Assembly (NCBI GenBank): GCA_033442325.1
Contig: JAWQFM010000001.1
Span: 542,410 to 606,409, forward strand
Direction: 5' to 3'
DNA: 64,000 bases
Origin: Salpingoeca rosetta
Taxonomy: Eukaryota > Protista > Choanoflagellata
Each line of letters opens with the position of its first letter. Position 1 is the stretch's first letter. The position numbers were made by a program, and so were the translations under genes. This document shows, piece by piece, positions 310 through 19,874 of the stretch. A model generated the notes under the pieces. That model did no database searches and was not told the DNA's origin. It was given only the letters and a program-made list of their open reading frames with translations.

Positions 310-3300
310 TCATTGATTGTTGCACTCTGGTGGCACCTCTTCGCCGTTGTTCTGCAGCGTTCGTTTGCGGCGGGCAGCAGCAGCCGTTGCCGCAGTCCCA
401 GCACGCGCTTTCTCAGCAACAGCGGCCCGGCGTGCACTGCGGGTGGATCGTGGCAGCTTCGACGGTGAGTCGACATTCTCGCCGTTGCGTGCGCTCAGCG
501 GTTTGCGTGCGCCACCAGCAACAGTGGCTGCCCCTGTCGCTGTTGCTGCTGCTGTCGTCGTCGTCGTCGTTGCTGTTGTTGACGATGATGAGGATGATGA
601 TGATGATGGTCGCAGCGTCATGCTACGGAGCGTGGGAGCACGGCGCCGTGTCGCCGGGCCCGTCTGCGTCGTTGAACTTGCAGGTTCCTTCTTGGAGGCC
701 GTGGATGTTGGCGCACCTGGGCCATCCCTGTTCTTCGTGTCATCGGCAAACGTCACCTTTGCTCGCTTGGAGCGCGTGGATGTGTTGGCGCTGTCTCCGT
801 CTTCCTCCTCGTTGCTCGCGCGCCGCAGGGTTGAGCGCGTCTTCATTGCGGATGGGGGAACGCCGCTGCTTGCCGTGGAGCGCAGGCGACGGAATGCCGA
901 GGATGGCGCAGCACCAGTGCCGTCAGAGGCACCCATCGCACTTGTGTTGCCGTCCTGGCTTTCATCTGCGGCTTGGCTAGTGTTCTGCTTGCTGGTGTGC
1001 TGCGCAAGCTTTGGGCGTACAGCACGCGGGGTGTGAGGAACGATGTCACCGTCTTCCCCAGCTGCATGCGTGGTGCTGGTTTTGCTGTCCTTCGGCTTTG
1101 CATCGTCGCCACCCGCCAGCGCATCTGCCGTCATTGCAGCAACTGTGGACGTGGACAGGAGCGCAGAGTCCTGCATGCGCTGGCTGCTTGGCAGGCGCAC
1201 CCCGTTCTCCTCCAGCACAAGCTCCAAGCGGCGGTTGGCGCGCGTCAGCTGAATCACCACAGATTCCATCTTCTCGCGTGCGTGCACCGCCTCCTTCAGC
1301 TTGCCCTCCAGTGCCTCGCATTCGTCCTCCGCCTTGTGGCGGCTCGAGCGCTGCTCACTCAGCGCAGACTTCAACTCCTCCACCTTGCTCGACAGTTCGC
1401 TCACTTGCTGCGTGCTGGCCTTGGTCTGCTCTGAGGCAGTTACCTCAGCGGCCGCCTTGGCTGCCCGTCCACGTGCTTGCTCCAGCTGCTCCTCCAACTT
1501 GCTAACGCGTTTCTGTGCGCGCTGCAGTTCACGCTCCATCGCCGCCCTGGCCGTCTCCGCGGCGGATTTCGCCTCGAGGGCAGCGGCCTTGTCGCCCTCG
1601 GCTTCCTCAAGATGCTTTCTTGCGTCCTCTGCGGCCGCCAGCGCCTCCTGCAGTCGCTGCTCCTGCGCTGTTTGCTGCTGTTGTGCGGCGTCGCCAATCT
1701 CCTGGCGCACCCGCTTGCACGCGGACTCCATGTCCTTGCGCAGCGATGCAATGCATTCTTCTTGCTCCTGCACCTGCCGCTCCAGGTCACTCACGCGCCC
1801 TTGTGCAGTCTCCAGGGCCTGCGCAGCCTGCTGGTGCCGGCTCCGCTCTGCCTCCACTTCCGCCCGCACGGCAGCGTTCTCGTCGCGCAGAACCTCCCGC
1901 TGCTGCTCGAGCGCAGCAATGTCGCTTTCAAGGACAGCCTGGCGCTTGGCCATGTCCAGCTGCCCGTCCTGAAGATTGCCCTGCGCCGCTTTTGCTTCAG
2001 CCTTGGCAGCCCGCAATTCTGCACGCGCCGTGTCAAGGCTGGTCTTGAGCTCAGTCACTTGGGCTTGCGTATCATCAAGCTGTGACTGCAGTTCACCAGC
2101 ACGCTCCACGCTCTCATTGCACTTGTCCTGGAGTGTCTGCATCTCTGCACGGACAGACTCCAGCTCCTGCTGAGCTGCCTGCACCTCCTCTTCAGAACGC
2201 ACCTTGGCCGCCTGCAGGTTTTGCAGTTGGTGTGTCAGTGCTTCGAGCTCTGCGCCCTTGTCGCTGAGCGCCATTCGAGCTTGTTCAAGCTCCTGCAAGG
2301 TCGTGACCTTGGCGTTGTTGGCGGAAGACAGATCCTGCGAGAGCTCACTTGTCTTCGATTCAGCCGCGTCAAGATTCGCCTTGTATTCATTAACACAGTT
2401 GGTGAGTTGCTCAACTTCTTTCTGCAGGGATGTGATGGCGGCTTGGTGCTGCTTGGCCATGCTGGCGTTTTGTTCCTCAAAGGACATGCGTGCAGTCTCC
2501 AGCTCCTGTTGTGCCTGTTGCAGGCTGGCGCAGGCCGTGTCCAGCTGCTCTTGCTTCTCCTGAACCTCGGTCTTGGCAGCATTACGCTCCTGCTGCGCAG
2601 TCTCCAGCTCCTGCTGTGCCTGTTGCAGGCTGGCGAAAGCCGTGCCCAGCTGCTCTTGCTTCTCCTGAACCTCGGTCTTGACAACATCACGCTCCTGCTG
2701 CGCAGTCTCCAGCTGCGTCGTCAGTTGTGCCACTTCCTCCTGCTTGGAGGCTGCGGCCTGTTGCAGGTGCTCAATCTCCTGCTGGTGCGAGGCAACATCC
2801 TTCCTCAGCCCGCTCACTTGGTCAAGGGAAGCTTCAAGATCGGCCTGTCTGGTGTGCAGCTGCTCCTTCATGTCGCTCACCTGCTGCTCAAGGCCTGCGA
2901 TCTGTGCCCCAGCCGCTGCAGACGTTTGCTGGTGGCTTGCCATCTCCTCCGTCAAGCGGGCGTTGCTCTCATTGGCTTGGTCCAGCTCGGCCTGCAGCGC
3001 TTCGAGCGACGACTTTGCAGCATCGAGACTTGCCGTCTTCGCTACCAGCTCGCTCTTGAGGTCCGACAGAGATGATTCCAACGCGGTCACAGCCTCAGCA
3101 TGCGTCTGCTCCGCCTTCTCTCGCTGCTGTGTTGCTTCGGTGAGGGCGGCTTGCATGCGTTCGCTGTGCGCCTCCTCCATCTCCCGCATTTTCTGCTCGG
3201 CCGTTGCTGTTACTTCGGCGAGTTGCTCGCGAACGCTCTGCAACTCCTGGAGCTGAGCTGACGCGCTGCTCTCTTGATCTGTGCGCAAGGTCTCCAGGTC

Positions 3301-6300
3301 GAGCTTGGCCTCCTCCAGACTACGCTCACGCTCCCCAACCTGCTCCTTCAGGGATGTAACTTCAGAAGCCAGTGCCTCGACTTGCTCGTTCATCGCTGAG
3401 ATGGCAGTCTCGTGCTGCAAGCGCACGTCGTTCAGCTCTGCCTGTGCTGCTGCCTCAGCCTCGTCCACTTCCTGCGCATGCTTGGCGTTGACCTCATAAA
3501 GCTGTTGCTGGTGCTCTGCGCGTGCCGCGCGTTGGGACTCGTCTGCATCTTCCTTTGCAGACACCAGCTCCGCCTCCAAGCGCTGGCGGCTCTCCTCCAG
3601 AGCAGACACCTGCTCCTGCAAGTCACCCAGCTTCTGCTGCAGCGCTTCGCCTTGGGCGCTGGCCTCGTCCCGTGCCTCAGCTGCGGCCTGAGCAGCTTGG
3701 CTCTTGTCAGCCACCTCCTTCTCTAGGCGCTCAATTTCCACCTTGGACTCGGCGGCCAACTTCGCCTGCTTTGCCTCGGCTTCGTCAGCTTGTGCCTGCA
3801 GTTGCTCGCGAAGCTGTGTCAGCTCCTCCTGTGCGGTAGCAAGTGCCGCTGTCGCTTCCTTGGCTGCGCTTGTCGCCTGCGCCAGCTCTGCAGCAGTCTC
3901 TTGCGTATCGCGCTCTGCACTCTCCTTGAGCACGCGCAGCTCCTCTTCCAGCGCCTCGCGCTCCATACTGTTCTGAGCCAGCTGGGCCTCCGCTGTGGCC
4001 AGTGCTTCCCGCGCCGAGTTCAGGGCCCCGGCACTCTCGGCGCTGCTTGTCTGCAGTTGGTCAATGTCCTTGCTCAGCTGCTCAATCTTCGCCTCAGCGG
4101 CCAACTTTTCCTCCTCTTTTGCATCGAGCTGGGCCTGCAGCTTGTTCATGTTGTCGTCCATGTTCGCGAGCTCTTGCGTCTTGGATTCGAGCGCAAGCTG
4201 GTGCTCCTCAGCCTGCTGTTGCTGCAGGCGCTGGTGTTGCGACACCATCTCCTGGCGCTGTTCCTCTGCAGCCGTAAGTGCCGCCGCCTTTTCTGCGCAC
4301 TCGCCCTTGAGCTTGGAAACGTCGTCGTTTGCCTGCCGCACTGCTGTTTTCAGGCTGTCGACCTCAGCCCGCAATACCACAAGCTCTTCCTCTTTCATGT
4401 CAAGGAAGCACTGCAGCTGCTGCAGCTGGGCGTTGCGTGCTTCCTCGTGCTGCTGCCGCTGCTGCTCGCCCTCGGATGTGGCTGCCTCGGCCTCCTTCTC
4501 CAGGCGCGCAATCTTATCACGGGCTGTGTCGAGTGCGCGCTTGGCTTCTTGCCGCTCACACCGCGCCGCTTCCAGTTGCTCCTCCAGCTCGCGCTGACGC
4601 TGTTCTGCAGTCTCCAGCGAAGCAGCCGTGGCTTGCTGCGCTTGCTGCAACTCTGCGCACTGCGCGTCAACTTCATTCTTCGCGGCCTTCAGCTCCTGCA
4701 GCTCCTTCTCCTGTTGCTCCACCTGCTCCAGCAGCTGTGTGCGGCGGGCGTCCTGCGACTGCAAGAAGGCGACCCGGTCCTCAAGCTCGGAGCATTGTTG
4801 CTGCGCCCGATCGAGCTCAAGCTTGGAAGACTCCCGCAGCTGCGCCAGCTCAGCCTCCAGTGAAGCAGCTTGCCCCGCATTTTCCTGTGCTTTTGCCTTG
4901 GCTTTCTCCAACTCCACATGCGCTGCCTCTGCCGCTGCCTTCTCCTGCGAGGCTTGCGTCGTGAGCTCTTCGCATGCCTGCTGGGCCTGCTGCAGTTCGT
5001 GCGCTGTTGTCTCCTGATCACGCTGCATCGCCTCACGCTCTGTGCTGTGCTGGGTCTTGACGGCGTCAAGCTCTGCCAGGGCCTCCTCCAGCCGCGTTTT
5101 GATGGTGCTGACTTCATCGCCCTTGGAGTGCACGACGGCATCGTCAAACGCGAGGTTCGACTGCAGCTTGTCATTCTCTGCCTTGAGGGCGTTGATCTGA
5201 TCGCGCAGTGCGTCCTGCTTCTCCTCGCCCGCAGCCAACTCAGCCCGAAGCTGCTGCTCAGCCTCCTCCAGCCGCTGCTGCGTCTGTTCCGCGGCCTTGA
5301 GGGCAACCTGCGTGTTCTCGAGCTCCTTCTTCACTGCATACAGCTGCTCGTCCTTGGCCTCGCTCTCCTCGCACAGGGACTCCGCGTCCTCTTGCGCACA
5401 CTCCAGCTGCGCCTCCAGGTTCATGCGCGTGGTGCGCAGGTTCCGCTTGAGTTCCTTCGTGGACTTCTCCTGTGCGGCCATCTCCTGCGTGAGGGCGGCA
5501 AGCTTCTCCTCCAGCGCCACCTTCGCCTGCTGCAGCTCCGTGCGCTCGTCCTGCAGCGACACCACCTTCGCCATGAGCTCCTGCATTTCGCCCTGCAGCT
5601 GCTGGGCAGCCTGTGCGTTGGCCTCCGCCTTTGCCTCTGTCACACGTGCTTGTTCGGCATGCACCTGCTCCTTGAGGGACGCGCACAGCTCTTCAAGCTC
5701 CTTCACGCGCTCCTTGGCGGCCAGTGCGTCGTGGGTAGCCGTGCTCTGCTCCTCCTGTGCAGATTCCAGGCTGCGAACAAGGCTCTCGCGTTCCTGCGCG
5801 ATGTGATCCAGCTCCTTCTTGAGGGCGTGCACCTCCTCGCGGCTGTCGCTGGTCACCTGGGCCAGCTTGCCTTCCAGTGATGCCACAGCGCGGACAAGTT
5901 CAGCACGCTTCTCTTCCAGCTGCGTTGCTCGCTGTGTTTGCGCGGCTGCTTGCGCCTGCACCTGCTCAAGCTTGGCTGCAAGGTCCCGCTGCGCCGCGTC
6001 GTTTGAGCTTGCGTTGTTCTTGATGGCGGTGAGTTCGGTGCGCAGCTGGGCGGCCAAGTCGTCGGCCTCCTTCAGGCGTGCGGTTAACTCGGTACACTCG
6101 TCCTTCTTCGTCTGCAGCTGCTCCTGCAGGGACTCCATATCTGCCTGCGCTTGCGCCAGTTCGTCCTTTAGCTGAGCTGCAGCGCGGGTGCGCGTACGCG
6201 TGCGGGTGGCAGTTGCCTCCTCTGCGTTGTGCAGCTTTTCTCGCAGCGTCTTGTTCTCTGCTGCCAGGTGCTCCAGCTTGGTGAATGCCGCCGACAGGGA

Positions 6301-7762
6301 GGACGATGTCTGTGCGAGTTCATCCTTGGCCGACGCTGCGTGGCTGTCCAGGTCACGCCGCAGCTTGCGCATGGACCGCTCCAAGTTGTCCGAGGCCAGC
6401 CGGAGCGCGTGCTGCTCGGCTTTGTACTTCTCCACCAGGGCGTTGGCGTTGTCAAGCTCGCGTGCCTGCTTGCTGTTGGTGGCTTGTGCAGCTGAGAGCT
6501 GTGCCTCCGCCTCTGCCACAGCGTGATGCAGCTGCGTCTGCGCAGCCTCGTGCTTGCGGCACTCCTCGTCCAGTTGCGCCTCCAGCTGCTGCACGCGCTG
6601 TTGCTGTGCACTGCACTCCTGTTGTGCCTTGGCCAGCGACGCCTCAATCTGCGTGCGTGCGGTGGTCCACTCAGCCTCCCTCTCAGCAAGCGTGGCGCGG
6701 TGCTGTTCCATTTGCTGGTTGATGGCGTCCATATCTGGTGCTGCTGCCTCCAGCTCTTGCACACGGGTTTGCAGCTCGGCTGCCTGCTTGGCGGCGGTTG
6801 TTGCTGCGTCTTGCGCCTCTTGAAGCGCTTGTTGTGCATCGTCACGCTCCTTGGTCAGCTGATCGTGCGTTGCGCGGGCGTTGTCAAACTGCGCCTGCAA
6901 GTCGTCTTTTTCCTTCTGCAGCACGTGCACTTGCTCCTCCAGCTGTGCAATGGCGGTGTTGCTAGCCGCCGATGCTGCTGCTGTCTCGTTTGTCATCTCA
7001 TCCACCTTGGACCTGGCGCTTGCCAGCGCCGTGTTGAGGGACTCGCAATCGTCTTTGGCCTTTTGCAGCTCTGCAAGCGCAGTGGCGTGCTCCTCTGTCT
7101 TCGTCTTCAGCGCTTCTTGAGCTTGGTCCAGCTCTTGCTGTAGCTGCGGCACCTGCTTGCGCAACCCTACCACCTGCGTTCAAGAAACAGGACACGTGCA
7201 CGCGAACGGACAGCGTAAGTGTGAACGTGTGTGTGTGTGTGTGTGCGTGCGTGTGTGCGTGCGTGCGTGTGTGTGAGAGAGAGTGTGTGTATGTGCGCGT
7301 GCGTATGTGAGTGTGTGTGCGTGCGTGTGTGAGTGAGTCAGTGAGTGAAGGTTGCTGGTTCTGCATGCACAAGGCAACAGAGGTGTGAAACTCGGGCCGT
7401 CGTTTTGCACAAGCGGGATGTTTCATACCTCTTCCTTAATGGACTTGTGGGTGACAGCGGCATTCAGAGTTTGCACCTCCAGCTTCTTTGTAACAGCGTG
7501 CGCATGCTCCAGCTGTTCCTCAAGCTCCTTGACGCGCTCCTGGTCAGAGAGGGTGAGAGAGCGCAAAAAGAGGCAGGGTTGCGAGTTTGTTTTGTTTGTT
7601 TGTTTGTTTGTTTGAGAATGGGAGGGAGAGGGAGCGAGTGTGTGTGGGTGTGAGTGAGGCACAACAACGTGGCTGTGACGATGATGTAACATTGTGACAT
7701 ACACCGTCCAGCTGCAGTTGCCAAAAACGCTGGACGCTTGGCACACAACAACAACAACAACT

Positions 7763-7796
<34 letters not shown>

Positions 7797-9098
7797 CTTA
7801 AACATCTTAAACAACAACAACAACACACACTCACACAAACACACACACTCACACAAACACACACACACGTTCACACCTGTGAGGCGGCTGCGACGACGGC
7901 TTGTTGTTGTTCTTGAAGTTGCGTGCGCAGGGAAGCGAGCTCTTTCTTGTGGGCGTCAATAACCTGTTTGGCTGCCGTGTGGTCCTCCTGCTCTTGCTTG
8001 AGCTCTTGCTGTGCTGATTGCAGCAACTGCTGCATGTCTGCCATTGTCTTCTCCTGCGTTTCAGCCTGTTCCTTGAGCGTGCTCTCCAGCTTAAGCTTGG
8101 TCTGCCGCAAGTGCTTGTATGCCGTGTCTCTTGCCGCAAGGTTCTGTTTGAAGGACTTGACCTGCGGCAATACACAACAAGCAACAACGCAAGCGGAATG
8201 AGAGCGTGAGAGGAACGGGACGAAACACGGGGGACAGCAGCGCGCCACCGCACGAAACGGAGACGGCTCACGCCCACACGCCCACAAGCACACACACACA
8301 CAAATGCATTTGTAAGTACAACCACACCACAACTGTGTGCGCTTCTGCGTCAAACACATGCGCAGGCAAGAGTACACACACGCACACACACACACACACA
8401 CACAAAACCAAACAAAGCAAAGCAAAACAAACACATTCGCACCTGAGCCTCCAGCTCGGTGATCTTGTCCTTGGACATGGTCTGTTCATTGAACATGCCT
8501 GAAAGCTCGTTCTCAAGATCTGTGACGCGGCTCTGCGCTTGCTTAAAGGCCTTGTCATGCGCAGCTGCCTTGGCCTCTGCGTTTTCCAGACCAACTTGCG
8601 CCTGCGCGTATTTGGCCTGCAGCTGCTCCAGCTCCTTCTTGCTGTCTGCCAACTGCTGTGCAAGCGAGGACGCAGCCATTGTGTGCTCGCTCTCAGTCGA
8701 CTGGGAGTCTTGCCTGGCGGCGTTCAGCTGCGCACGCAGGTCAGCAATGGTTGCCTCCAGCTGGTCGCGCTGTGCCGTTTGCTGCTTCTCAATCTCGAGG
8801 TTGCGTGCCTCTGCCTCCTTTGTTGCCTTGGCCAGCAGCTTGTGTGCATGTGCGTCCGCTTCTTCCAGCGACTGCGATGACGTCTGCTGCTGCGTGGACA
8901 GCTGTTGTTGCATGGTTTCCACAATGGTCTCACGCTGCTTCATGCCTGTTTGCAGCTCCTCGATGTTGGCGCGTGCTGCATCCAGCTCATCCTGCACACG
9001 CTGAGCGGCATCCTGTGGTTGCAAGAGCGGGAAAGAGATAGTGTGTGTGAGCGAGTGTGCGTGTTTGAGAGAGTGTGCTATTGTGAGACAGTGTGCGA

Positions 9099-9130
<32 letters not shown>

Positions 9131-9921
9131 GTGTGCGAATGTGTGTGCGCGCGAATGCAACTGTGACAGAATGAACCATTGTGCACACAATATGTGCATG
9201 TCCATGAGATGCTCACGTGAGCTTCCTCGAGCAGCTTCTTGTAGTGTGTTTCCGTGGACTTGATCTTGTTCTCTGCCTCAAGGAGCTGCTGCTTGAGCGT
9301 TGAGACCTGCTGGTAGGTGCTGTGCTCTTGTGCTTTTGAAGCGGCTGCAGCCTGGTCTTGCAAGCGCGCGTTCTGCCAAATGCATAAGTGTGTGTGTGTG
9401 TGCATGCGTGAGCATGTGTGTGTGTGCGTGCGTTAATGTGTGTACGTGTGTGTGTGTGTGTGTTTGTGTGTACATGCGTGTATTGGTGTGAAGGAACAAA
9501 AATGAGACGAGGGAGAGGGATACAAGTGTCGCTCAAACACACCGATGCACAAACAAAGCACACTGTGTGGGAACAAGTTGCACCATGGGCTCACTTCTGC
9601 GTGCAGGTCCTTGATTGTCGCTTTGTCACGTTGTGCTTCCTTTGTGTGCTGGGCAATCTTGTTTTCCAGCTGATTAATCTGCATTGTGCGCGCCTGTGCC
9701 ATTTTATCATGCAAACGAACGTGAGAGCATGAGAATATGTGCGTGTTCGTGTAAGTGTGCAAGTTTCAAGGTGAGATTGTGTGTGGGCAGGTCAGTGCGA
9801 CGTGTACACGTGAGTTTTCCCAGCGATGATCACGTATTATTGACAAACATAGACTGGGGCGTGCTTCGACTGTTTGCCCTGTGATTCTCTTGTTCTTCCA
9901 TCAGCTTTCGCGCGCACCCAC

Positions 9922-9960
<39 letters not shown>

Positions 9961-10929
9961 TACACGCACACGCAGACACACACACACACAAATACACACA
10001 CACACACAAATACACATAAACACACACTCTCCCACTCACACACACACAGGTATCCAAATTCACACGCACCTTGACATCATCTTGAAGACGGCTGTTCTGG
10101 CGATGAAGCTGGTCAATGGTCTGGCCGAGGGAGCATGCCTCGCGCTCCAGCTCTTGTACCTGTTGTGCGCAATCGATGATGCGCCATGCACAGGCAAAGA
10201 CGGCATCGGTGAGTTGCCTTTGTACACCACGAACGCGACCAGTTTCATTTGCTTGTTGTTGTTACATGATCGCGAGGGCTGCACACGCCAACAAGACATT
10301 CCAGGCCCCCATTGAGAACTCACGCGACGCTTTGATTCAGCAGCCTGGTTCTTGATTTTGACTTGCGCCGCATTCAAGTTGTCAATCTGGAAGGTCTTGT
10401 TCTGCGTGTCGCGCGTCAACTGCTGCACGCGGCGTTCCAACTCTTCAACCTGGCAGCGCCAGCAGCAACAACAAGGCACAACGTAAAGTGAACCACCGAG
10501 CATGTCGCCCAACTTTGTATTCATGTCACTTGTCAGAGTGAAGGCCAGCTTGACAGCAATGCAAATGTACACAAACAAACAAACAAACAAACAAACAAAC
10601 AAACAAACAAACAAACAAACAAACAAACAAACAAACAAACAAACAAACAAACAAACAAACAAACAAACAAACAAACAAAAAAACAAACACACACACATGC
10701 ACACAAACACACACACACAAAAACAAACACACACACGCACAGGCACAAACACCCACACACACACACAAACAAACACACACACACAAACAACCCACACACA
10801 CACAAACAAACACCCACACACACACACGCACACAAACACAAACACACAAACCAACACGCACACATGACGAACCTTTTGCAGGGCGACCCCTGGCAGGTTG
10901 TTCTTCCACTCGTTCTGACGCCACGACAT
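310..10929 (-). CDS. CENPF: CENP-F-like giant coiled-coil protein, ~2785 aa, 9 exons: 10929-10873, 10449-10324, 10159-10070, 9693-9595, 9372-9217, 9012-8443, 8161-7877, 7539-7429, 7173-310
   Basis: Spliced N-terminus [19 protein letters not shown]|[31 protein letters not shown] aligns with the human CENP-F start (MSWALEEWKEGLPTRALQKIQELEGQLDKLKKEKQQRQFQLDSLEAALQK, recalled). About 2500 aa of E/Q/A/L/K heptads follow, then a basic S/T/R tail ending ECNNQ* (CENP-F ends CKVQ). All eight introns are GT-AG, phase 0. Confidence 0.8.
2492..2714 (-). repeat. In-frame 105-bp tandem repeat (35 aa, five heptads), ~2.1 copies, inside the coiled-coil gene
   Basis: gcagtctccagct recurs at 2492, 2597 and 2702. 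Protein unit: [35 protein letters not shown]. Confidence 0.9.
10570..10690. repeat. (CAAA)n tetranucleotide microsatellite in intron 1 of the CENP-F-like gene
   Basis: Direct reading. Confidence 0.95.
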
Positions 10930-11408
10930 GACGGCGTCCTTGTTCCCTCTGCGTCCCAAAGGAGGTCTCAACAGTGGTAGGGATGAGAGCGGGGAGGGCC
11001 GAGGATGGTGAGGTGCTGGTGTTGTGGTTGTGGTTGTGGATGGATGGAAAATGAAATTTCGAATTTGCCGCGGAAACAGTTACTCGACTTTCAATGTATG
11101 TCTTCATTTAATTTTCTGCTGCCAGGTTTGCCCCTTGTTTGTCGTGTTGCAAGCAAGCAACAACGGCGGACGACAAAAGACCAACAAGCGACCAAGGGCT
11201 TTGCACTGCGCACAACAGACAACAACCCAACAGCCCCAACAGCACAGACAACACACAACCACAAACTGTACACAACAGACACCATCATCCCCTCGCTCAT
11301 TCACCATCCACTGTCCGGGCCGGGACGCAAACAGTGAGTGCAGCCATCACCAGCTAACCCGCTGCCTCATCCTACTGCTGTGGAGGCAACAAGGCAGCAC
11401 CGGCCACC
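10930..11408. promoter_or_regulatory. 479-bp bidirectional promoter / 5'UTR region between the CENP-F-like gene and beta-heavy spectrin
   Basis: Divergent ATGs at 10929 (-) and 11409 (+; perfect Kozak GCCACCATGG). AT-rich core flanked by leaders that are CA-rich on each gene's own sense strand. Confidence 0.75.
11058..11076 (-). promoter_or_regulatory. Putative CDE/CHR (E2F + LIN54/MuvB) cell-cycle element
   Basis: Minus strand reads TTTC-CGCGG-CAAA-TTCGAA: CDE core CGCGG, 4-nt spacer, TTYRAA. It lies ~130 bp upstream of the CENP-F-like ATG. The plus strand also carries TTTGCCGC (E2F consensus TTTSSCGC). Confidence 0.55.
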
Positions 11409-12277
11409 ATGGAAGAGATTCAGCACTCGTTGCAGGTGGAGCGGGAGCAGGTGCAAAAGCGCGCCTTTACGCGCTGGATCAATAGCATCCTGCGTGACAC
11501 GGGCTTGCACATCGACGACCTGTACAGCGACCTCTCTGATGGAACAGTGCTGCTCACGCTCCTGGAGACCATCTCCGGGGCGCAGCTGCCTGCGCCGTCG
11601 CGCGGGCGCCTGCGCGTGCACAAACTCGAGAACTGTGCCCACGCACTCCGCTTCCTGAAAGCAAGCAAGGTCAAGCTGGAGAACATCAGCGCGCAGAACA
11701 TTGTGGATGGAAACCCGCGCCTGATCCTCGGCCTCATCTGGACCATCATCTTGCGATTCCAAATGCAAGAGATCCAGCTCGAAGGCGACGCCAAGTCCGC
11801 CAAGGAGGCCCTTCTCTACTGGTGCCAGAAAGTCACCAAGGGCTACCCCAACGTGGACATTCGCAACTTCACATCAAGCTGGAGCAATGGCATGGCCTTT
11901 AACGCCATCATCCACAGCTTTAGGTACAAATACGCCTCGCAGCTTGTCTGTGTGCGCGTGTGTGCACGTGTGTCTTTGTGTGTGTCTGTGTGTCTTGTGT
12001 GTGTCTGTGCATCTGTGCCTTTCGCGTCTGTCTGTGTGTGTGTGTGGTGCGTAGGTTTGTATTGTCGGGCACCCCTCGCTTTGTCTCTAACTCGACCTAC
12101 TGCCTCAACTTCTTAACGCTTCTTTCTTTTTTTCAACGCAGACCGGACCTTGTGCGCTACAATGATCTTGACCCACAAAAGTCCATTCGCAATCTCAAGT
12201 CTGCCTTCCAAATTGCCGAAGATCACCTTGGCATCTCTACCATCCTCGAGCCAGAAGGTACGCATGTGTGTGTATGT

Positions 12278-12343
<66 letters not shown>

Positions 12344-15300
12344 ACGACCTTGCCCAACCCTTTCCCGCCAAGCTCTCGTCAACTCCGCGCCCACCTCTCG
12401 GGGTTTTCCATAATCTAATCTAATTTCTCCCTTTCGACCCGCACCAACCTCGCTCACGCGCTGTTGCTGTTGCTTCCCATTGCCCACACCAGATGTGAAG
12501 CGCGGGATGGACGAGAAGTCGGTCATGGCGTACTTGGCGGGCTTCTACCACTACGCGTCTCAGCTCAAGAGCACTGAAGTGGACATCAAGCGCCTCAACA
12601 AGTTCCTCACATTCCTCCTTGACATGGACGCCATGCAAAGCCAATATGAGGTGTCTGTTGAATGTGCACCGCATCAAATCCACGCCAGCCACAATGGTGA
12701 TTGCTGGTGTAGACTCTGTAACGGTGTGCGCACACCAGAAACAAAACAAACAAGCCCACATGCACACCCTCACACACACACACACGCGCGCGCGCGCACA
12801 CACACACACCCTCGCCTTCTTCCCCTCCTCGTCCCTTTCACTCTCTCACTCATCTACACACACACACACCTGCACACCTACACACGCTCTCGCTCTCTCT
12901 CTCTCATTCACACACATCGCAACAATGTAGGAGCAAGCGAGAGCCCTTCTCCAGTGGATTGTGGCGACAACAGAGCGGCTGCGGAAACGCGACTTTGCCA
13001 ACAGGCTGGAGCCGCTTCGCCGCCAGCTGCTGGAATTCAAGCAGTACAGAACCGTGGAGAAGCCACCCAAATTTGTCGAGCGCGGCCATCTGGAGGCACA
13101 CCTCTTTGCCATCCAAACGCGCCTCTTCTCCCAATCACACCCCGTGTACGAGCCCCCGGAGGGCCTGCTCATCACGGACATCAACCACGAGTGGTCTGTG
13201 CTGGAGACGGAGGAGCACGAGCGCGAGGTGGCGTTGCGCGCCGCCGTCATTCGGCAGGAGCGGCTGGAGCAGCTGGCTGAGAAGTTCTATCGCAAAGCAG
13301 ACCTTCGCGAGTCGTGGCTCGACGACAATCTCACCCTCGTCAGCGTGGACACCACAGCCACCGCCAACGGCAACGGCAACGGCACTGCCGCAGCCAACAC
13401 CGCCGCCAGCAGCAACGTGACGACCGACGCGGCGAGCGGGGGCGAATTCGCGCTCGCCACTGTGGAGGCAGCGGTGAAGCGACACGAGGCCATTGACACG
13501 GATGTGCGCGCCCACGCAGACCGCATCGAGGCCATGTGCGAGCTGGCAGGCGGGCTCCGCGACGCAGGCTACCACGCGGCAGATGAGGTGACGCAGTGTG
13601 AGCAGCGCATCCTGGATAAGTGGGAGCAGCTCCTTGCACTCATCAGGGAGAAGCGGGCGGAGCTTGACATGGCGCTGGAAGTCGCAAACACCCTGCATGC
13701 CATGAACCTCGTTGCCGCGGCGCTCGCTGCTGCCCTCACCACGGCCTCCTCCACCACGACTGGCAAGCACGTGCAAGAGTGCGAGGAGATGCTGGAAACC
13801 CACAGCAGCCTGCTCGAGGCAGACGTGCAGCCGCTGCTGGAACGCGTGCACGCCGTAAACGCGCAGGCACAGAAGTTTGTGGACCTGGGCCACTCACGCG
13901 CGCCCATGCTGGAGGAGCAGCAAGACCGCCTCTTGCACCTCCACGCAGAGCTGGACAAGCAGGTGCGCCGGCGCAGGGAGCAGCTGCAGGACGCCCTGAG
14001 CCTGCAGGCGTACCTGAGCGATGCCGATGAGGTTGCATCATGGATTGCCAGCAAGGAGTCCAGTGCCGCGTCCACGGACCACGGCCGCGACGTCACCTCC
14101 GTGCTCAGTCTCCTCAAGAAGCACACCGCCCTCATTGCAGAGCTCAAGGAGCAGGAAAAACACGACGTCGGCCCCATCGTTGCGCAGGGCACGCAGCTCG
14201 TGCAGGCGGGCCACTTTGCAGCAGAGGCAATCCAGGCGCGAAACACGGAGCTGTCCACGGCCTTTAATGCGCTCAAGAGCGCCGCGTCCAGTCGCCGCAA
14301 GCACCTCGAGCTCAACAAGCAGCTGTGCTTGTTCAGCAACGAAGCAGCCGAGGCCCTGGCCTGGCTCAAGCACCGCGAGCCCCTGGCTTCGGAGCAGGAC
14401 ACCGGCAGCACGCTGTCTGCGTCGCAGGCCCTCCTGCGCCAGCACGAGGCACTGCAGGACGAGTTGGACGCATTCGCTCGCACAGTGGCCGCGCTCAAGC
14501 GGCACGGCAGCGACCTCAAGCTCCAAGGCACGCCGCAGGCTGCCAAGGACAGCGCAAACGGAAACGGCGGCGCCACCAGTGGCGCCAGTGGCGCAAGGGG
14601 CAAGAAACAGCTCAAGGCGCTGCACGCGTATGCGAGCCGGTCCAAGAACGAGCTGAGCTTCCAGAAGGGGGACATGTTCACCCTCATCAGCGACACGAAC
14701 AAGGACTGGTGGAGCGTGAAGACAGCCGATGGCGCCCTGGGCTACGTGCCTGCCAATTTCGTCAAGGAGGTCAAGGCCGGCAAGCGCTCTGCAGGTGCGG
14801 GCGGCATTCAGCTCTCCGCGTCGCAGCGCGCGTCCGTTGAAGAGACGCTGCAGGCCGTTGTGCCGCTGTTTGACCACCTGCAGAAGCAGTGCAAGGCCAG
14901 GCACCAGCAACTGCTGGACGCGGTTGCCGCGCATGCGCTGTTGCTTGAGCACGAGGAGCTTGACGCGTGGCTGGAGCACCACACGGCCATCATCTCCTCC
15001 ACAGAGACGGGCAAAGACCTCAACCACGTGCAGAACTTGCTCAAGCAGATCCAGAGCCACAGCGCCGACATGGAGACGCAGCGCAGCCGCCTGCAGCACG
15101 TGCGCGATGAAACGGCGCGCTTGCTCGAGAGCGGGCACACACAAGCGCCACAGCTGCAGCAGCGTCGCGACGACCTCGACGTACGCTGGTCCAAGCTGCA
15201 GGATGCCACGCAGCAGCGAGCACGGGCCCTGCGCGCGTCGCAGCGTGCGCTTACGTTCAACCGTGACGCAGAGGAATTGCGCGCGCTCATGCGCGAGAAG

Positions 15301-17247
15301 CAGGCGGCGCTGTGCAATGGCGAGCAGCCGCGCGACGCCTCGTCCGCGCAGGCGCTGTCCCGCAAGCAGGATCAGTTTGAGGCCGAGGTGCAGGCGGTGC
15401 AACAGTCGGTCGCCGCTCATCGCGCAAAGGGCAACACCCTTGCCGAGAAGTACCCTGCCCACGCGGGGGCAATTGTGGCAAAGGCGCAGCAGCTGCAGAG
15501 CGAGCTTGCGGAGCTGCAAGATGCCACGGCGGCGCGGCGACAGAGTTTGGAGACCAGCGCACGCGTGCTGCAGTCCAAGCGTGCTTTGTCCGATGCGCGG
15601 GCCTGGCTGCGCAACGTGCAGGCGACAATGAAGGGTGCCACCACCCGGCCCACCACGCCATCGCACCCCCTCTCAACTGCCGCCGCCACGGCTGCAAGCC
15701 CAGGTTCATCACCAGGTGCATCCGCGCCATCCACGAGCCGCACCACGCCATCGGGCTCCCGTACACACCTGGGCCTCGCCTTCACCAGCGTACAGGCGGT
15801 GCAGGCGGCCATTGAGGCGCACGAGGAGCTGCGCAACGAGATGGACGCGCGCGATCAACAGGCAGCCAAGGCGCTGGAAGCAGCAGAGCGGCTGCTGGAC
15901 GACGCCATCATCGCTGAGCAAGAGCAGGAGCACCTGCAACGGCAACGCGCACGCACGCCCGATGCAGGCGCACGCCAGCGCGACAGCACAGTCAGCACAG
16001 CCAGTGGCGGCAGTGGTGGCAGCACCACGCTTCTTGGTGACGTGCGCGCTCTTGTTGATGAGGTGCAAGAGCAGCAGCAGCAGCAGCGTGAGCGCTGGCG
16101 TGAGCGTGCTTCGTTCCTCAAGGAACAGCAGCGGCAGCTCAGGCTCAAGGCAAGGCTCGATGCCCTGGAGAGCGTGCTCACGGCGCAAGAACAGCGCCTG
16201 AAATCGCGCGCGCGGTGGGAGGCGGGGTCTGCGGCAGAGCTGGACCACCTCCTGCGCGTTTGTGAACAGGAGCACCAGCTGCTTAACACGCACCGCGACA
16301 CGCTGGCCGCCACCGAGACCCAACTACACAAGGGCAGTGGCTCAAGCAGCGGTGGCAGGAAGGGCTCGGGCTCCATCACAAGCAGCCGGCGCATGTCCTC
16401 TTCCAGCACCGACATGCCCACTGCCCCCACCGATGCCCAGGGAGACGAGGAGGCCTTCGCCCACGCCCGGGACGCAGCGAAATGGCTGCCTTCTGCGCCC
16501 GCGTTGGAACATGCGTTGACCTTGGCGCAGCAGCAAGTTGATCGCCTGGAGGCCATGCTTGTTGCAGCACAAGAGAGCATTCAGCGCCAGCGCGAGTTCT
16601 ACGCCGCCGAACAGCAACTGCAAGAGGCGCAAACCTGGCTGGACGAGAAGGCGCGGCTGCTTGGCGACTCGGGCATGAACACAAGCAACCATCATCAGCA
16701 GGCAGCAATAGTGTCACAGGGCGAGGGTGAAGAAGCCGGGCCTGGTAGTGCGCAGCCGTCGTCGCCGCAGCACGAGCAGAACCTGCACCGCAAGCTGAGG
16801 CAGCATGATGCGCTGGCTGCTGAAATCCAGGCCTACGATGGTGTCGCGCAGGGGGCTGTGCAAGCAGCCAACGCCTTTGCGAAGCGCCATGCCGCCCCGA
16901 GCGGAGCCGCTGATGTTCGCGCGCGCGATGCTGGTGATGCAACTGGCACCGTTGCCAGGGAAGAGGCCGACACGCTGAGCGCAATGGCGCAACAGCTCGA
17001 GACGGCATGGGAAGCGGTGCAGGCGGCAGCGGCCGACCGCGGTCGCCACTTGCGTGAAGCCATTGAACAGCGCGAGTTTGAGGAGCTTGTGTCTGACCAC
17101 ATGGCGTGGTGCTCAACCATGACGGCCCGGCTGACGGACATTCGCGCACGTGCCGAGAACAACCGTGGCGGGGGCGCCCCGTCACACCGTGCCTCTTCCG
17201 ACAACGATGGTTCTGTGACCAGTGGGGCTGCCGGAGATGTGCAACAG

Positions 17248-17301
<54 letters not shown>

Positions 17302-19813
17302 GATGCAGGTGCTGCAAGTGCTGGCAGCAGCGTGCGCGCGCTGCTGCAAACCATCGCCGCCAACGTGCGGCCGGAGCTGGACGTGCAGGCGCTTCGCCTG
17401 GACACGCTTCAGGACCTGTGTGTCCGGCTTGTTGAGAGCGGTCACTCAGACGCTGCTGGTATCAAAGCGCGCACGGAGCGGGCTGCTGCGGCCTTTGCGG
17501 AGGTGCAGCCAGCGGTCGATGCGTGCGAGCGCGATCTGCAACATGCCTTGCGAGGGTACACGCTGCTGCACGACCTGCAGTACCAGACGTCGCTCTTGCA
17601 GGCGCGTCTGGCGCAGGTGTCCACCACCCAGTGCGGCACCACAGCACGAGATAACGCGACCCTCATCAAGGTGCACGAGGTGTTTATGGCACAGGTGGAG
17701 ACGCAAGAGCAGTCTGTCGACGAGTGCATGGCCAGCGTGGAGGCATACAAGGAGGACCACACCCAGCACCAAGAAAGCCATGCAGCCACCACCGACAGCG
17801 AAGGTTCTCACGCCGTGGCCACTGGCCGTGACGGCAGCGTGCGAAGCAGTGTTGGCGGCAACTTGGTTGCGCAGCTTGAGGCTGCAGCTGCTTACCTTGC
17901 TCAGCAGAGGGCCGAGGTGCGCGACGCGTGTGTGCAACGGCGCCTGCACCTGCAGGAGACGGCAACCATCTTCCGCTTCCTGGGCGAGTGCTCGTCGTTG
18001 GTGGCGGGTCTGGAGGAGAAGCGCGAATTGATCCGTGCAGCCGTGAATGAACTCGGCGCCGAGCGCGATGCAACGCAACACATCATCTCCCGACACCAGG
18101 CTGTGCGGGAGGAGCTGGCCGTGCTTGAAACCGAGCTGCTGCACCTGCAAGACACAGTCAACGCCCATGCTGAACGTGCACCGGCATCAAGCATACCGGA
18201 AACAAGCGACGACCGCACGGGCGATGGCCAGCAGCCAACGCTGCGCACTGTGGAGCAGCACATTTCTTCTGCCCTCAGCCTCGCTGCCGAGTTGAAGGAG
18301 GAAGCGGAGCACCGACGCGCGCTGTTGCAGCAGCAACTGAGGATGCACGATTTGACACGGGACCTGGCTGAGTCGCTCGCTTGGCTGCAGCAGCTGGTGG
18401 ACCAGGCCTCCAACCACGACATTGGAAAGGACGAGGAGGACTGTGAGCTGCTTCGCGACCGCTTCGACAAGATGCAGGAGCAGGCAGAGGCCAACATGCC
18501 TGCGCGGCTTGATGAGGTCTGTGCACAGGCGCGCACCTTCCTCAGCGAGGGTGAAGACGGCTCCGTGCCCCAAGCACCAGAACAGCGGGAGATGGTGTCT
18601 GGCGCGGTACAGAAGCTCACGACTGCCAAGCAAGCGTTCGACACCGCCAGCGCGGAGCGATTGAACGAGCTGGACGGCGCCCTGAAAATTCATCACTTTG
18701 AGCGCACGGCACAGGAGGTGCAGACACGCATCCATGACAAATGCGCGCTGGTGGACATCTCCTCTGCGCCAGAGGAAGTGGGTGCGATTGAGGCGCTGCA
18801 GCGGAAGCACGAAGGGTACGAGCACGACCTGGCCGCCCTGGAGACAGCCGTGCACGATGTCGCGGCGCAATGCAGCCAGCTGTGCACCGCGTTCCCTTCC
18901 CAGCAGGAGCGGCTGCAGGCCACCAACGCCGGCGTCTCCGCTGCATGGGAGCAGCTGCTCGCCGTAGTCGAAGCATCCAGGGCCAAGCTGGCCGAGTTGC
19001 ACAAGTACCTCATCTTCTGTCGCGACGCCCAGCGCCATTTGCGGTGGTGCCAGCACACGCTGCCTCGATGCCGGTACGACCATGAGCCCGGCAACGCAGC
19101 TGATCGGTCGCTTGGCACGCCCATGAAGCGACCCACCTCTGCTCTGCTTGGTGGCACGTCTTCTCCGACCGTGCTGACATCGCGGCCAGCCTCGCGTGCG
19201 TCTGCACCTGTCACGCCATCTGGGACGCTCGATGCCTCACATCGAATGTCCCCAGAAAAGCTGGTGGGCTCGCACGACAGCTCAAACACCAACGTGTCCG
19301 CCACTGCGGATGCATCGTTCACAAGCCAGGCCGGTGCATGGGTGCTGACCAACGCACGGGACGTGGAGGCTGCGCTTGTGCGCCATCTCGAGCTCAAAGC
19401 CGACATTTCCACGCAGGCGGAGGACCTGGACGGTTTGCTGGGCTTGCAACAGCAGCTGTCCAGCTCAGCCCGTGGCCGCCACATCGAGGGTATCAGACCG
19501 AACGGTGAGGCGGGTGACGATGGCGCAGAGGACGCATCTGCGCATCTGGCCCAGTGGCAGCTTGCGCGTGCCGGTGAACTTGCAGAAGAGACGAGGGCAT
19601 GCATGACGGACGTGCAGCAGGCATGGGAAGCCGGGCAGAAGACACTGGACCAGCTCTCCGAATACTACAAGCTGCAACGCGAGGTGCAGGCCCTGCATGA
19701 CCAACTCGACACGAAGGAAAAGCTGACCGTGCAGCTGGCTGCGTCCTTTGCTGTCGCTGCTGCGAGCCCAGTCCAAAACCACGACGCAGTTGGACAAGAC
19801 AAAGAACAAACGG

Positions 19814-19874
<61 letters not shown>

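What the first reader, a model, noticed from the sequence alone, without database searches (positions are those of the whole stretch)
310..10929. Full-length CENP-F-like kinetochore protein in a probable choanoflagellate, hidden by small 5' exons
Seen: the ORF track shows only an anonymous 2287-aa coiled coil. Splicing eight upstream phase-0 exons yields [39 protein letters not shown] and a protein ending CNNQ*. Known: animal CENP-F starts MSWxxxEWKxxLPxxALQKIxELE..FQLDSLEAA, is a ~3000-aa coiled coil and ends in a farnesylated CxxQ. It is generally treated as an animal fibrous-corona protein. Inference: both diagnostic termini and the overall length are conserved here, so CENP-F may predate animals. 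Such a gene would probably be annotated as hypothetical or myosin-like.
Basis: partly seen in the sequence, partly recalled or inferred. Interest (0 to 1): 0.85.

Follow-up and report, generated by a model that had tools for sequence, protein, structure and literature searches.

The report
Choanoflagellate CENP-F gene, already catalogued

Summary
Nine minus-strand exons (10929..310) with GT-AG, phase-0 introns give a 2785-aa protein that starts MSWRQNEWK and ends CNNQ.

The identification also holds.
- The joined first 91 residues hit Pfam CENP-F_N at 58.6 bits (cut-off 37.7, E 1e-15).
- A phmmer search of 1.84 billion proteins returned 101 hits, nearly all aligned N-terminus to N-terminus.
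- 18 of the 26 long proteins retrieved end in CxxQ. They include proteins named CENP-F from Hydra and a frog.
- The rod shows heptad periodicity, and both termini are basic.

It is not new. Dataset EV1 of van Hooff et al. 2017 (EMBO Rep) lists Salpingoeca_rosetta_SROS008257_CenpF. It has the same length, the same eight junctions and the same C-terminus. A Capsaspora orthologue is listed with it. So the 5' exons were not hidden, and a pre-animal origin of CENP-F is already on record.

- An ichthyosporean member (Chromosphaera) scores above the Pfam cut-off.
- A marine metagenomic relative has the same exon layout. Its termini are conserved (exon 1 95%, exon 2 89%, tail PPECNSQ) while the rod is only about 36% identical.
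- The vertebrate Rb-binding motif is absent.

Kinetochore function and farnesylation remain inferred.

The parts
10873..10929 (-). Exon 1: ATG plus 19 codons ([19 protein letters not shown]), followed by a GT donor
   Evidence: Pfam CENP-F_N positions 1-19, 16.3 bits. 95% identical in the marine relative L009:1954-2013.
10324..10449 (-). Exon 2, 42 codons ([20 protein letters not shown])
   Evidence: CENP-F_N positions 21-59, 18.3 bits. 88.6% identical in the relative. Contiguous with exon 1 in environmental relatives P0102, P0003, P0011 and P0100.
10070..10159 (-). Exon 3, 30 codons; end of the stretch that matches CENP-F_N (model positions 1-89)
   Evidence: The same exon boundaries are seen in P0014 and P0002.
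9595..9693 (-). Exon 4, 33 codons
   Evidence: Fused with exon 5 in the marine relative (L009:2783-2998).
9217..9372 (-). Exon 5, 52 codons
8443..9012 (-). Exon 6, 190 codons, coiled coil
   Evidence: The HSP q161-368 in the relative ends at the same junctions.
7877..8161 (-). Exon 7, 95 codons
7429..7539 (-). Exon 8, 37 codons
310..7173 (-). Exon 9: 2287 codons plus TAA. It holds most of the acidic heptad-repeat rod and the C-terminal tail.
   Evidence: Proline-free run of 1848 aa. Hydrophobic autocorrelation 0.26 at lags 7 and 14; rod pI 4.8.
313..1191 (-). C-terminal tail (residues 2493-2785): basic, Ser/Thr-rich, not coiled coil, with KRAK, RRR and RRKR clusters
   Evidence: pI 10.6, 28% S+T. 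No similarity to animal tails by phmmer, and no Rb-binding motif.
313..324 (-). CNNQ, a CaaX-type C-terminal box (putative farnesylation site), preceded by EEVPPE
   Evidence: 18 of the 26 long proteins retrieved end in CxxQ, mostly after acidic residues. The marine relative ends EEAPPECNSQ.
11058..11072 (-). CGCGG-N4-TTCGAA, a CDE/CHR-like promoter element 129-143 bp upstream of the ATG (candidate only)
   Evidence: Single match in the window, 0.05 expected. The relative has CGCGG-N4-TTCAAA upstream of its ATG.

Best explanation
This is the single-copy CENP-F (mitosin) orthologue of Salpingoeca rosetta, a nine-exon gene encoding a 2785-aa protein.

Shown here:
- A conserved basic N-terminal CENP-F_N module of about 90 aa.
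- An acidic heptad-repeat rod of about 2400 aa, roughly 370 nm long if it is one continuous coiled coil.
- A basic, Ser/Thr-rich disordered tail that ends in a CaaX-type box, CNNQ.

Inferred from human CENP-F:
- The protein dimerises through the rod.
- It binds microtubules through its two basic ends.
- It is made in G2/M.
- It is farnesylated on the terminal cysteine.
- In mitosis it is recruited to the outer kinetochore or corona, where it helps couple kinetochores to dynamic microtubules and to the Nde1/Ndel1/Lis1-dynein pathway.
For: - Gene model.
- Pfam CENP-F_N: 58.6 bits against a cut-off of 37.7, model positions 1-89, on the joined exons. The hits are collinear exon by exon.
- Only locus of this kind in the 55.4-Mb genome.
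- phmmer of the N-terminus against 1.84e9 proteins: 101 hits at E<=1e-3, almost all from residue 1 to residue 1. Many hits are 2000-3750 aa long.
- Named members among the hits: Hydra vulgaris centromere protein F, and Spea bombifrons centromere protein F carrying PF10481, PF10490 and PF10473.
- CxxQ ends 18 of the 26 long proteins retrieved.
- Published assignment: SROS008257_CenpF is the same protein by length, by all eight junctions and by C-terminus.
- Purifying selection on the ends: the marine relative is 95% and 89% identical in exons 1 and 2 and ends PPECNSQ, while the rod is about 36% identical.
- Heptad periodicity and charge layout.
- Human CENP-F has microtubule-binding domains at both termini (PMC5576903).
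- It docks on the Bub1 kinase domain and works with Nde1/Ndel1/Lis1 (PMC7614391).
- S. rosetta also has CenpE, MadBub, Spindly, ZW10 and Zwilch in the same catalogue.
Against: - Sequence similarity to animal CENP-F is detectable only in the first ~90 residues and in the last few.
- The vertebrate C-terminal Rb-binding motif (PF10490, PEGLP..KGFADIP) is absent.
- CENP-F_leu_zip stays below its cut-off: 17 bits on exon 9 and 23 bits on the first 91 residues, against 34.5.
- The tail finds nothing in animal homologues by phmmer.
- The a2 position of the box is polar (N here, S in the relative), whereas the animal homologues have V, T, M or I. Farnesylation is therefore uncertain.
- There is no localisation, interaction or expression data for this organism.
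Confidence: 0.9

Rival explanations
1. It is a true CENP-F homologue by descent, but in choanoflagellates it works mainly away from the kinetochore, as a long microtubule/dynein tether at the nuclear envelope, the mitochondria or the flagellar basal body. On this reading the kinetochore role is a later, animal elaboration.
For: Only the two microtubule-binding-type ends are conserved. No similarity was detected to the animal regions outside the N-terminal ~90 residues and the C-terminal box. Vertebrate CENP-F also acts at the nuclear envelope and at mitochondria (PMC5576903).
Against: S. rosetta has the Bub1-type kinase (MadBub), CENP-E, Spindly and RZZ parts in the published catalogue. A CDE/CHR-like element upstream fits G2/M expression. 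A CxxQ box is shared with the farnesylated corona proteins (PMC4436830).
Confidence: 0.08
2. It is an unrelated long coiled-coil protein whose N-terminus and CxxQ end resemble CENP-F by chance or by convergence.
For: Coiled coils give many spurious weak Pfam hits. The rod itself carries no family-specific signal.
Against: The N-terminal hit is 21 bits above the curated cut-off and starts exactly at Met1. The reciprocal search returns CENP-F proteins aligned residue 1 to residue 1. The terminal box and the acidic run before it are shared. A related marine species conserves exactly these parts.
Confidence: 0.02

Closest known systems
Salpingoeca rosetta SROS008257 in the CenpF orthologous group of van Hooff et al. 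2017 (EMBO Rep 18:1559, PMC5579357, Dataset EV1 CenpF.fa)
   Same: It is the same protein: 2785 aa, the same start, all eight exon junctions and the same ..PPECNNQ end.
   Different: Nothing in the sequence. The window comes from an assembly of 68 contigs, whereas the catalogue used the Broad V1 annotation.
Vertebrate CENP-F / mitosin (human CENPF; Pfam PF10481, PF10473, PF10490)
   Same: The N-terminal motif MSWxxxEWKxxLPxxALQK..FQ[IL]D; a rod of thousands of heptad-repeat residues; basic ends; a C-terminal CxxQ after acidic residues.
   Different: No Rb-binding PEGLP..KGFADIP motif. No CENP-F_leu_zip repeat above the cut-off. No detectable similarity in the regions that in human bind Nde1/Ndel1, Bub1, Nup133 or Miro. 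The box has polar a1 and a2 residues (CNNQ against CKVQ).
Capsaspora owczarzaki COWC002924 (CenpF in the same catalogue) and Chromosphaera perkinsii EP01135_P007554 (EukProt)
   Same: Both are non-animal holozoan proteins with the MSW..EWK N-terminal domain followed by a long coiled coil. The Chromosphaera protein scores 61.4 bits on CENP-F_N.
   Different: Neither ends in CxxQ as predicted: Capsaspora ends ..FFDLA and Chromosphaera ..NSLDE. These ends may reflect incomplete gene models or real loss.
CENP-E and Spindly, the other farnesylated corona proteins
   Same: Long coiled coil plus a C-terminal CaaX box ending in Q. Both have orthologues in S. rosetta in the van Hooff catalogue (PMC4436830; PMC10630089).
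   Different: CENP-E has a kinesin motor and Spindly has dynein-adaptor motifs. This protein has neither, and its N-terminus is specifically CENP-F_N.

Membership tests
CENP-F / mitosin | N-terminal CENP-F_N domain (PF10481) above the curated cut-off, starting at Met1 | tested here: met
   58.6 bits against 37.7, E 1.1e-15, residues 1-89 on model positions 1-89. Exon by exon the hits are 16.3 and 18.3 bits and collinear.
CENP-F / mitosin | A reciprocal search with the N-terminus retrieves proteins named CENP-F | tested here: met
   101 hits at E<=1e-3 among 1.84e9 proteins, nearly all aligned N-terminus to N-terminus. Named members are Hydra CENP-F and Spea CENP-F.
CENP-F / mitosin | Coiled-coil rod of thousands of residues (total length about 2000-3700 aa) | tested here: met
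   2785 aa in total. 1848-aa proline-free run; composition A/E/Q/L. Autocorrelation 0.26 at lags 7 and 14.
CENP-F / mitosin | C-terminal CxxQ (CaaX) box | tested here: met
   CNNQ*. 18 of the 26 long proteins retrieved end in CxxQ. The choanoflagellate-like relative ends CNSQ. Whether the box is actually farnesylated was not testable.
CENP-F / mitosin | CENP-F_leu_zip repeats (PF10473) | tested here: inconclusive
   17.0 bits on exon 9 and 23.1 bits on the first 91 residues, against a cut-off of 34.5. This cannot be told apart from coiled-coil background.
CENP-F / mitosin | C-terminal Rb-binding domain (PF10490, PEGLP..KGFADIP..RR) | tested here: not met
   No hit on exon 9. No hit at this locus in the genome-wide search. 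The motif scan was negative. The motif is also missing from the Hydra and lobster homologues and from two other long CxxQ-ending hits, so it does not define the family as a whole.
CENP-F / mitosin | Kinetochore/corona localisation through Bub1, and binding of Nde1/Ndel1 | not testable with these tools
   Known for human CENP-F (PMC7614391). There are no data for S. rosetta.
CENP-F / mitosin | Prior assignment to the orthologous group by curated comparative genomics | tested here: met
   Listed as Salpingoeca_rosetta_SROS008257_CenpF in Dataset EV1 of PMC5579357.

The most novel reading that the evidence does not exclude
The CENP-F family reaches the root of Holozoa, since an ichthyosporean (Chromosphaera perkinsii) member scores above the Pfam cut-off. 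In choanoflagellates, selection acts almost only on the two ends: the N-terminal ~60 residues are about 90% conserved and the tail motif PPECN[NS]Q is kept, while the rod is about 36% identical. On this reading ancestral CENP-F was a long, freely evolving spacer between two short functional end modules. The conserved polar CaaX variant may be a lineage-specific prenylation or degradation signal.
Probability: 0.55. Interest if true: 0.3.

Novelty: already known. Interest (0 to 1): 0.15.

Why it matters
The result shows that careful reading of raw sequence can recover a split gene and name it correctly. The biological claim, that CENP-F predates animals, has been on record since 2017. Some reviews still head the corona section 'a metazoan specialisation' (PMC7614391), so the point may be worth stating explicitly. 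S. rosetta can be manipulated genetically, so it could be used to test which CENP-F functions are ancestral: microtubule binding by the two ends, farnesyl dependence, and Bub1 docking. A practical lesson also follows. Whole-protein Pfam scans miss CENP-F_N even in the protein NCBI names Hydra CENP-F, so the N-terminus must be scanned alone.

Tried and rejected
- **The search for homologous proteins on the 2287-aa exon.** 8000 word-sharing candidates were scored and none reached E<=1e-5. Coiled-coil words swamp the index, so this blank says nothing.
- **Read laying, twice.** Places 9380-9426 lie in a CA-rich stretch of intron 4. No letters of them were sent to any search tool afterwards; later work used exon references, the spliced protein or other loci.
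- **Word shares from the look-up of sequencing runs.** The shares of 0.43 and 0.38 in two probable RNA runs are close to the exon fraction of the queried stretch (0.40). This is only suggestive and is not used as evidence.
- **Pfam on whole long homologues.** It gives nothing even for Hydra CENP-F, so absence in a whole-protein scan is uninformative.
- **PF10490 searched genome-wide.** Only an 18-bit sub-threshold match on another contig (C17), taken as noise.
- **PF10481 hit on contig C5 (L001).** It is a 54-residue coiled-coil exon matching model positions 139-192, taken as noise.
- **phmmer of the C-terminal tail against 26 long homologues.** No hits.
- **Word-indexed search with the Chromosphaera N-terminal domain.** Only three proteins were returned, none from outside Holozoa. 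This gives no evidence either way about an older origin.
- **Paper searches for CENP-F together with choanoflagellate or holozoan terms.** They found no main-text discussion. The assignment sits in the van Hooff data set, beside one main-text sentence that dates CenpF after LECA.
Full report
**Observation**

The ORF list shows the anonymous 2287-aa minus-strand ORF at 310..7173. I read the minus strand from 11400 down to 6900 and joined the pieces by script. This gives nine exons:
- 10929-10873
- 10449-10324
- 10159-10070
- 9693-9595
- 9372-9217
- 9012-8443
- 8161-7877
- 7539-7429
- 7173-310

Every exon length is a multiple of three and every intron is GT..AG, 164-423 bp long and full of GT/CA microsatellites. 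The product is 2785 aa with no internal stop. It begins [39 protein letters not shown] and ends ..[10 protein letters not shown].

**Is it CENP-F?**

- **Pfam, exon by exon.** Exon 1 and exon 2 each take CENP-F_N (PF10481) as their best family, at consecutive model positions 1-19 (16.3 bits) and 21-59 (18.3 bits).
- **Pfam, joined.** Exons 1-3 (91 aa) score 58.6 bits, E 1.1e-15, against a curated cut-off of 37.7. Residues 1-89 lie on model positions 1-89.
- **Copy number.** A six-frame search of the whole 55.4-Mb assembly finds no second locus of this kind.
- **Reciprocal search.** phmmer with the 91 aa against 1.84 billion representative proteins gave 101 hits at E<=1e-3. Nearly all align residue 1 to residue 1 and share MSWxxxEWKxxL..AL.K..E.E...Q.Q.
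- **Long proteins retrieved.** 26 of the proteins retrieved in these searches are 1250-3752 aa long. Of these, 18 end in CxxQ (CKVQ, CNVQ, CRVQ, CHVQ, CQVQ, CTVQ, CKTQ, CKIQ, CNMQ), mostly after acidic residues, as here.
- **Named members.** Source names include 'centromere protein F [Hydra vulgaris]' and 'centromere protein F [Spea bombifrons]', which carries PF10481, PF10490 and PF10473.
- **Rod and ends.** Residues 92-2492 are acidic (pI 4.8) with an A/E/Q/L composition and a 1848-aa proline-free run. Hydrophobic residues show autocorrelation of 0.26 at lags 7 and 14. Both ends are basic: pI 9.35 for residues 1-91 and 10.6 for the Ser/Thr-rich tail. Human CENP-F has microtubule-binding domains at both termini (PMC5576903).

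**What is missing**

- The vertebrate C-terminal Rb-binding motif (PF10490; PEGLP..KGFADIP) is absent from this gene. It is also absent from the Hydra and lobster homologues and from two other long CxxQ-ending hits, so it does not define the family as a whole.
- CENP-F_leu_zip stays below its cut-off.
- The tail has no phmmer similarity to animal homologues.
- The box CNNQ has a polar a2 residue where the animal homologues have V, T, M or I. Farnesylation is plausible but not assured.

**Already known**

A literature search led to van Hooff et al. 2017 (PMC5579357). [quoted passage not shown] Dataset EV1, file CenpF.fa, holds '>Salpingoeca_rosetta_SROS008257_CenpF'.

The printed sequence has 8 lines of 60 residues, then 38 lines of 60, then 25 residues, which makes 2785 aa. 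It shows all eight junctions of my model:
- ALQK|VEEL
- SKRR|VQEL
- DDVK|ARTM
- LHAE|NARL
- EEAH|DAAQ
- LEAQ|VKSF
- AASQ|ERVK
- IKEE|VVGL

It also has the same ..PPECNNQ end. It also shows that the Broad V1 annotation already joined the small 5' exons, and that the CENP-F assignment is published. The same file lists Capsaspora_owczarzaki_COWC002924_CenpF, so a pre-animal (filozoan) origin was already on record. It lists no Monosiga sequence. In the same catalogue S. rosetta also has CenpE, MadBub, Spindly, ZW10 and Zwilch. Wu et al. 2023 place the full RZZ-Spindly unit at the base of Obazoa (PMC10630089).

**Independent support for the gene model, in place of RNA-seq**

Comparative data fill the gap.

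- **Introns 1 and 2.** Environmental fragments P0102/P0001 have the exon 1-2 sequence in one piece, and P0003, P0011 and P0100 have exons 1-3 in one piece. So these relatives lack intron 1, or introns 1 and 2.
- **Exon 2 and 3 boundaries.** P0014, P0002, P0021, P0050 and P0066 lose similarity exactly at the exon 2 or exon 3 boundaries.
- **Whole-gene relative.** P0014 lies on three independent marine metagenome contigs of 12-13 kb, one of them from TARA Oceans. tblastn of my model on them shows the same layout, with HSP ends at my junctions. Exons 4 and 5 are fused there. Identity is 95% for exon 1, 88.6% for exon 2 and 36-37% for the rod.
- **C-terminus of the relative.** The relative's 2201-2204-aa terminal exon ends ..AAEEAPPECNSQ*, against ..[12 protein letters not shown] here.

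Both termini are therefore under much stronger constraint than the rod. That the relative is a choanoflagellate is an inference from this similarity.

**Breadth of the family**

P0028 is EukProt EP01135, Chromosphaera perkinsii, an ichthyosporean (taxonomic placement from my own knowledge). It is 1634 aa long and scores 61.4 bits on CENP-F_N at residues 38-180. This suggests the family goes back to the root of Holozoa. A word-indexed search from that domain found nothing outside Holozoa, but the tool's reach is limited.

**Mechanism**

Shown here: the domain layout, the heptad-repeat rod, the basic ends, the conserved N-terminal module and the conserved terminal box.

Inferred from human CENP-F (PMC7614391; PMC5576903; PMC4436830):
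- a parallel dimer about 370 nm long if the rod is continuous;
- microtubule binding at both ends;
- G2/M expression;
- farnesylation;
- recruitment to the outer kinetochore or corona through a Bub1-type kinase;
- cooperation with Nde1/Ndel1/Lis1-dynein.

A CDE/CHR-like element, CGCGG-N4-TTCGAA, lies 129-143 bp upstream of the ATG. It is the only match in the window, with 0.05 expected. A similar CGCGG-N4-TTCAAA lies about 200 bp upstream of the relative's ATG. Both fit G2/M control, but this is only a lead.

**Verdict**

The claims that it is hidden or new are not supported. The gene model and its CENP-F assignment were published in 2017, so interest is low. The modest additions are:
- the ichthyosporean member;
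- the end-focused conservation among choanoflagellate relatives, including the polar CN[NS]Q box;
- the note that whole-protein Pfam scans miss the domain even in Hydra CENP-F.

Noticed in passing
window 11058-11072 (minus strand); L009:1737-1751: CGCGG-N4-TTCGAA lies 129-143 bp upstream of the CENP-F ATG. It is the only match in 64 kb, with 0.05 expected. The marine relative has CGCGG-N4-TTCAAA about 200 bp upstream of its ATG. This may be a conserved CDE/CHR-type cell-cycle element, and it is the subject of another note of this scan.
   Followed up: partly
window 11409-24555 (plus strand): A divergently transcribed neighbour starts about 480 bp from the CENP-F ATG. By eye its first exon looks like a calponin-homology domain (..QKRAFTRWINS..). 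A 3864-aa ORF at 12961-24555 looks like spectrin repeats with an SH3-like stretch. It is probably a giant spectrin-family gene.
   Followed up: no
window 7174-10872 (introns of the gene): The introns are packed with strand-asymmetric microsatellites: (GT)n and (GTTT)n in introns 1 and 3, and (CA)n in introns 4, 5 and 8. The (GTTT)n array at 10571-10679 blocked the first read laying attempt, and a filter at places 9380-9426, in a CA-rich part of intron 4, blocked the second.
   Followed up: no
L008, L009, L010 (ENA metagenome contigs, one from TARA Oceans): An uncultured marine relative carries the whole orthologous gene with the same layout, but exons 4 and 5 are fused. Other environmental relatives (P0003, P0011, P0100, P0102) lack intron 1, or introns 1 and 2. 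Intron gain or loss at the 5' end of this gene is therefore dynamic among relatives.
   Followed up: partly
P0059, P0096: Whole-protein Pfam scans return no family at all for the 3555-aa Hydra CENP-F or the 3072-aa lobster homologue, although their N-termini carry the MSW..EWK motif. Long coiled coils seem to suppress the CENP-F_N hit, so the N-terminus has to be scanned on its own.
   Followed up: partly
L001 (G000:C5:1093934-1094095): A short coiled-coil exon matches CENP-F_N model positions 139-192 at 21.4 bits, below the cut-off. It is most likely coiled-coil background and not a paralogue.
   Followed up: partly
PMC5579357 Dataset EV1, CenpF.fa: The catalogue lists no Monosiga brevicollis CenpF. 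The Capsaspora entry ends ..FFDLA and not in CxxQ. Each case could be a real loss or an incomplete gene model.
   Followed up: no
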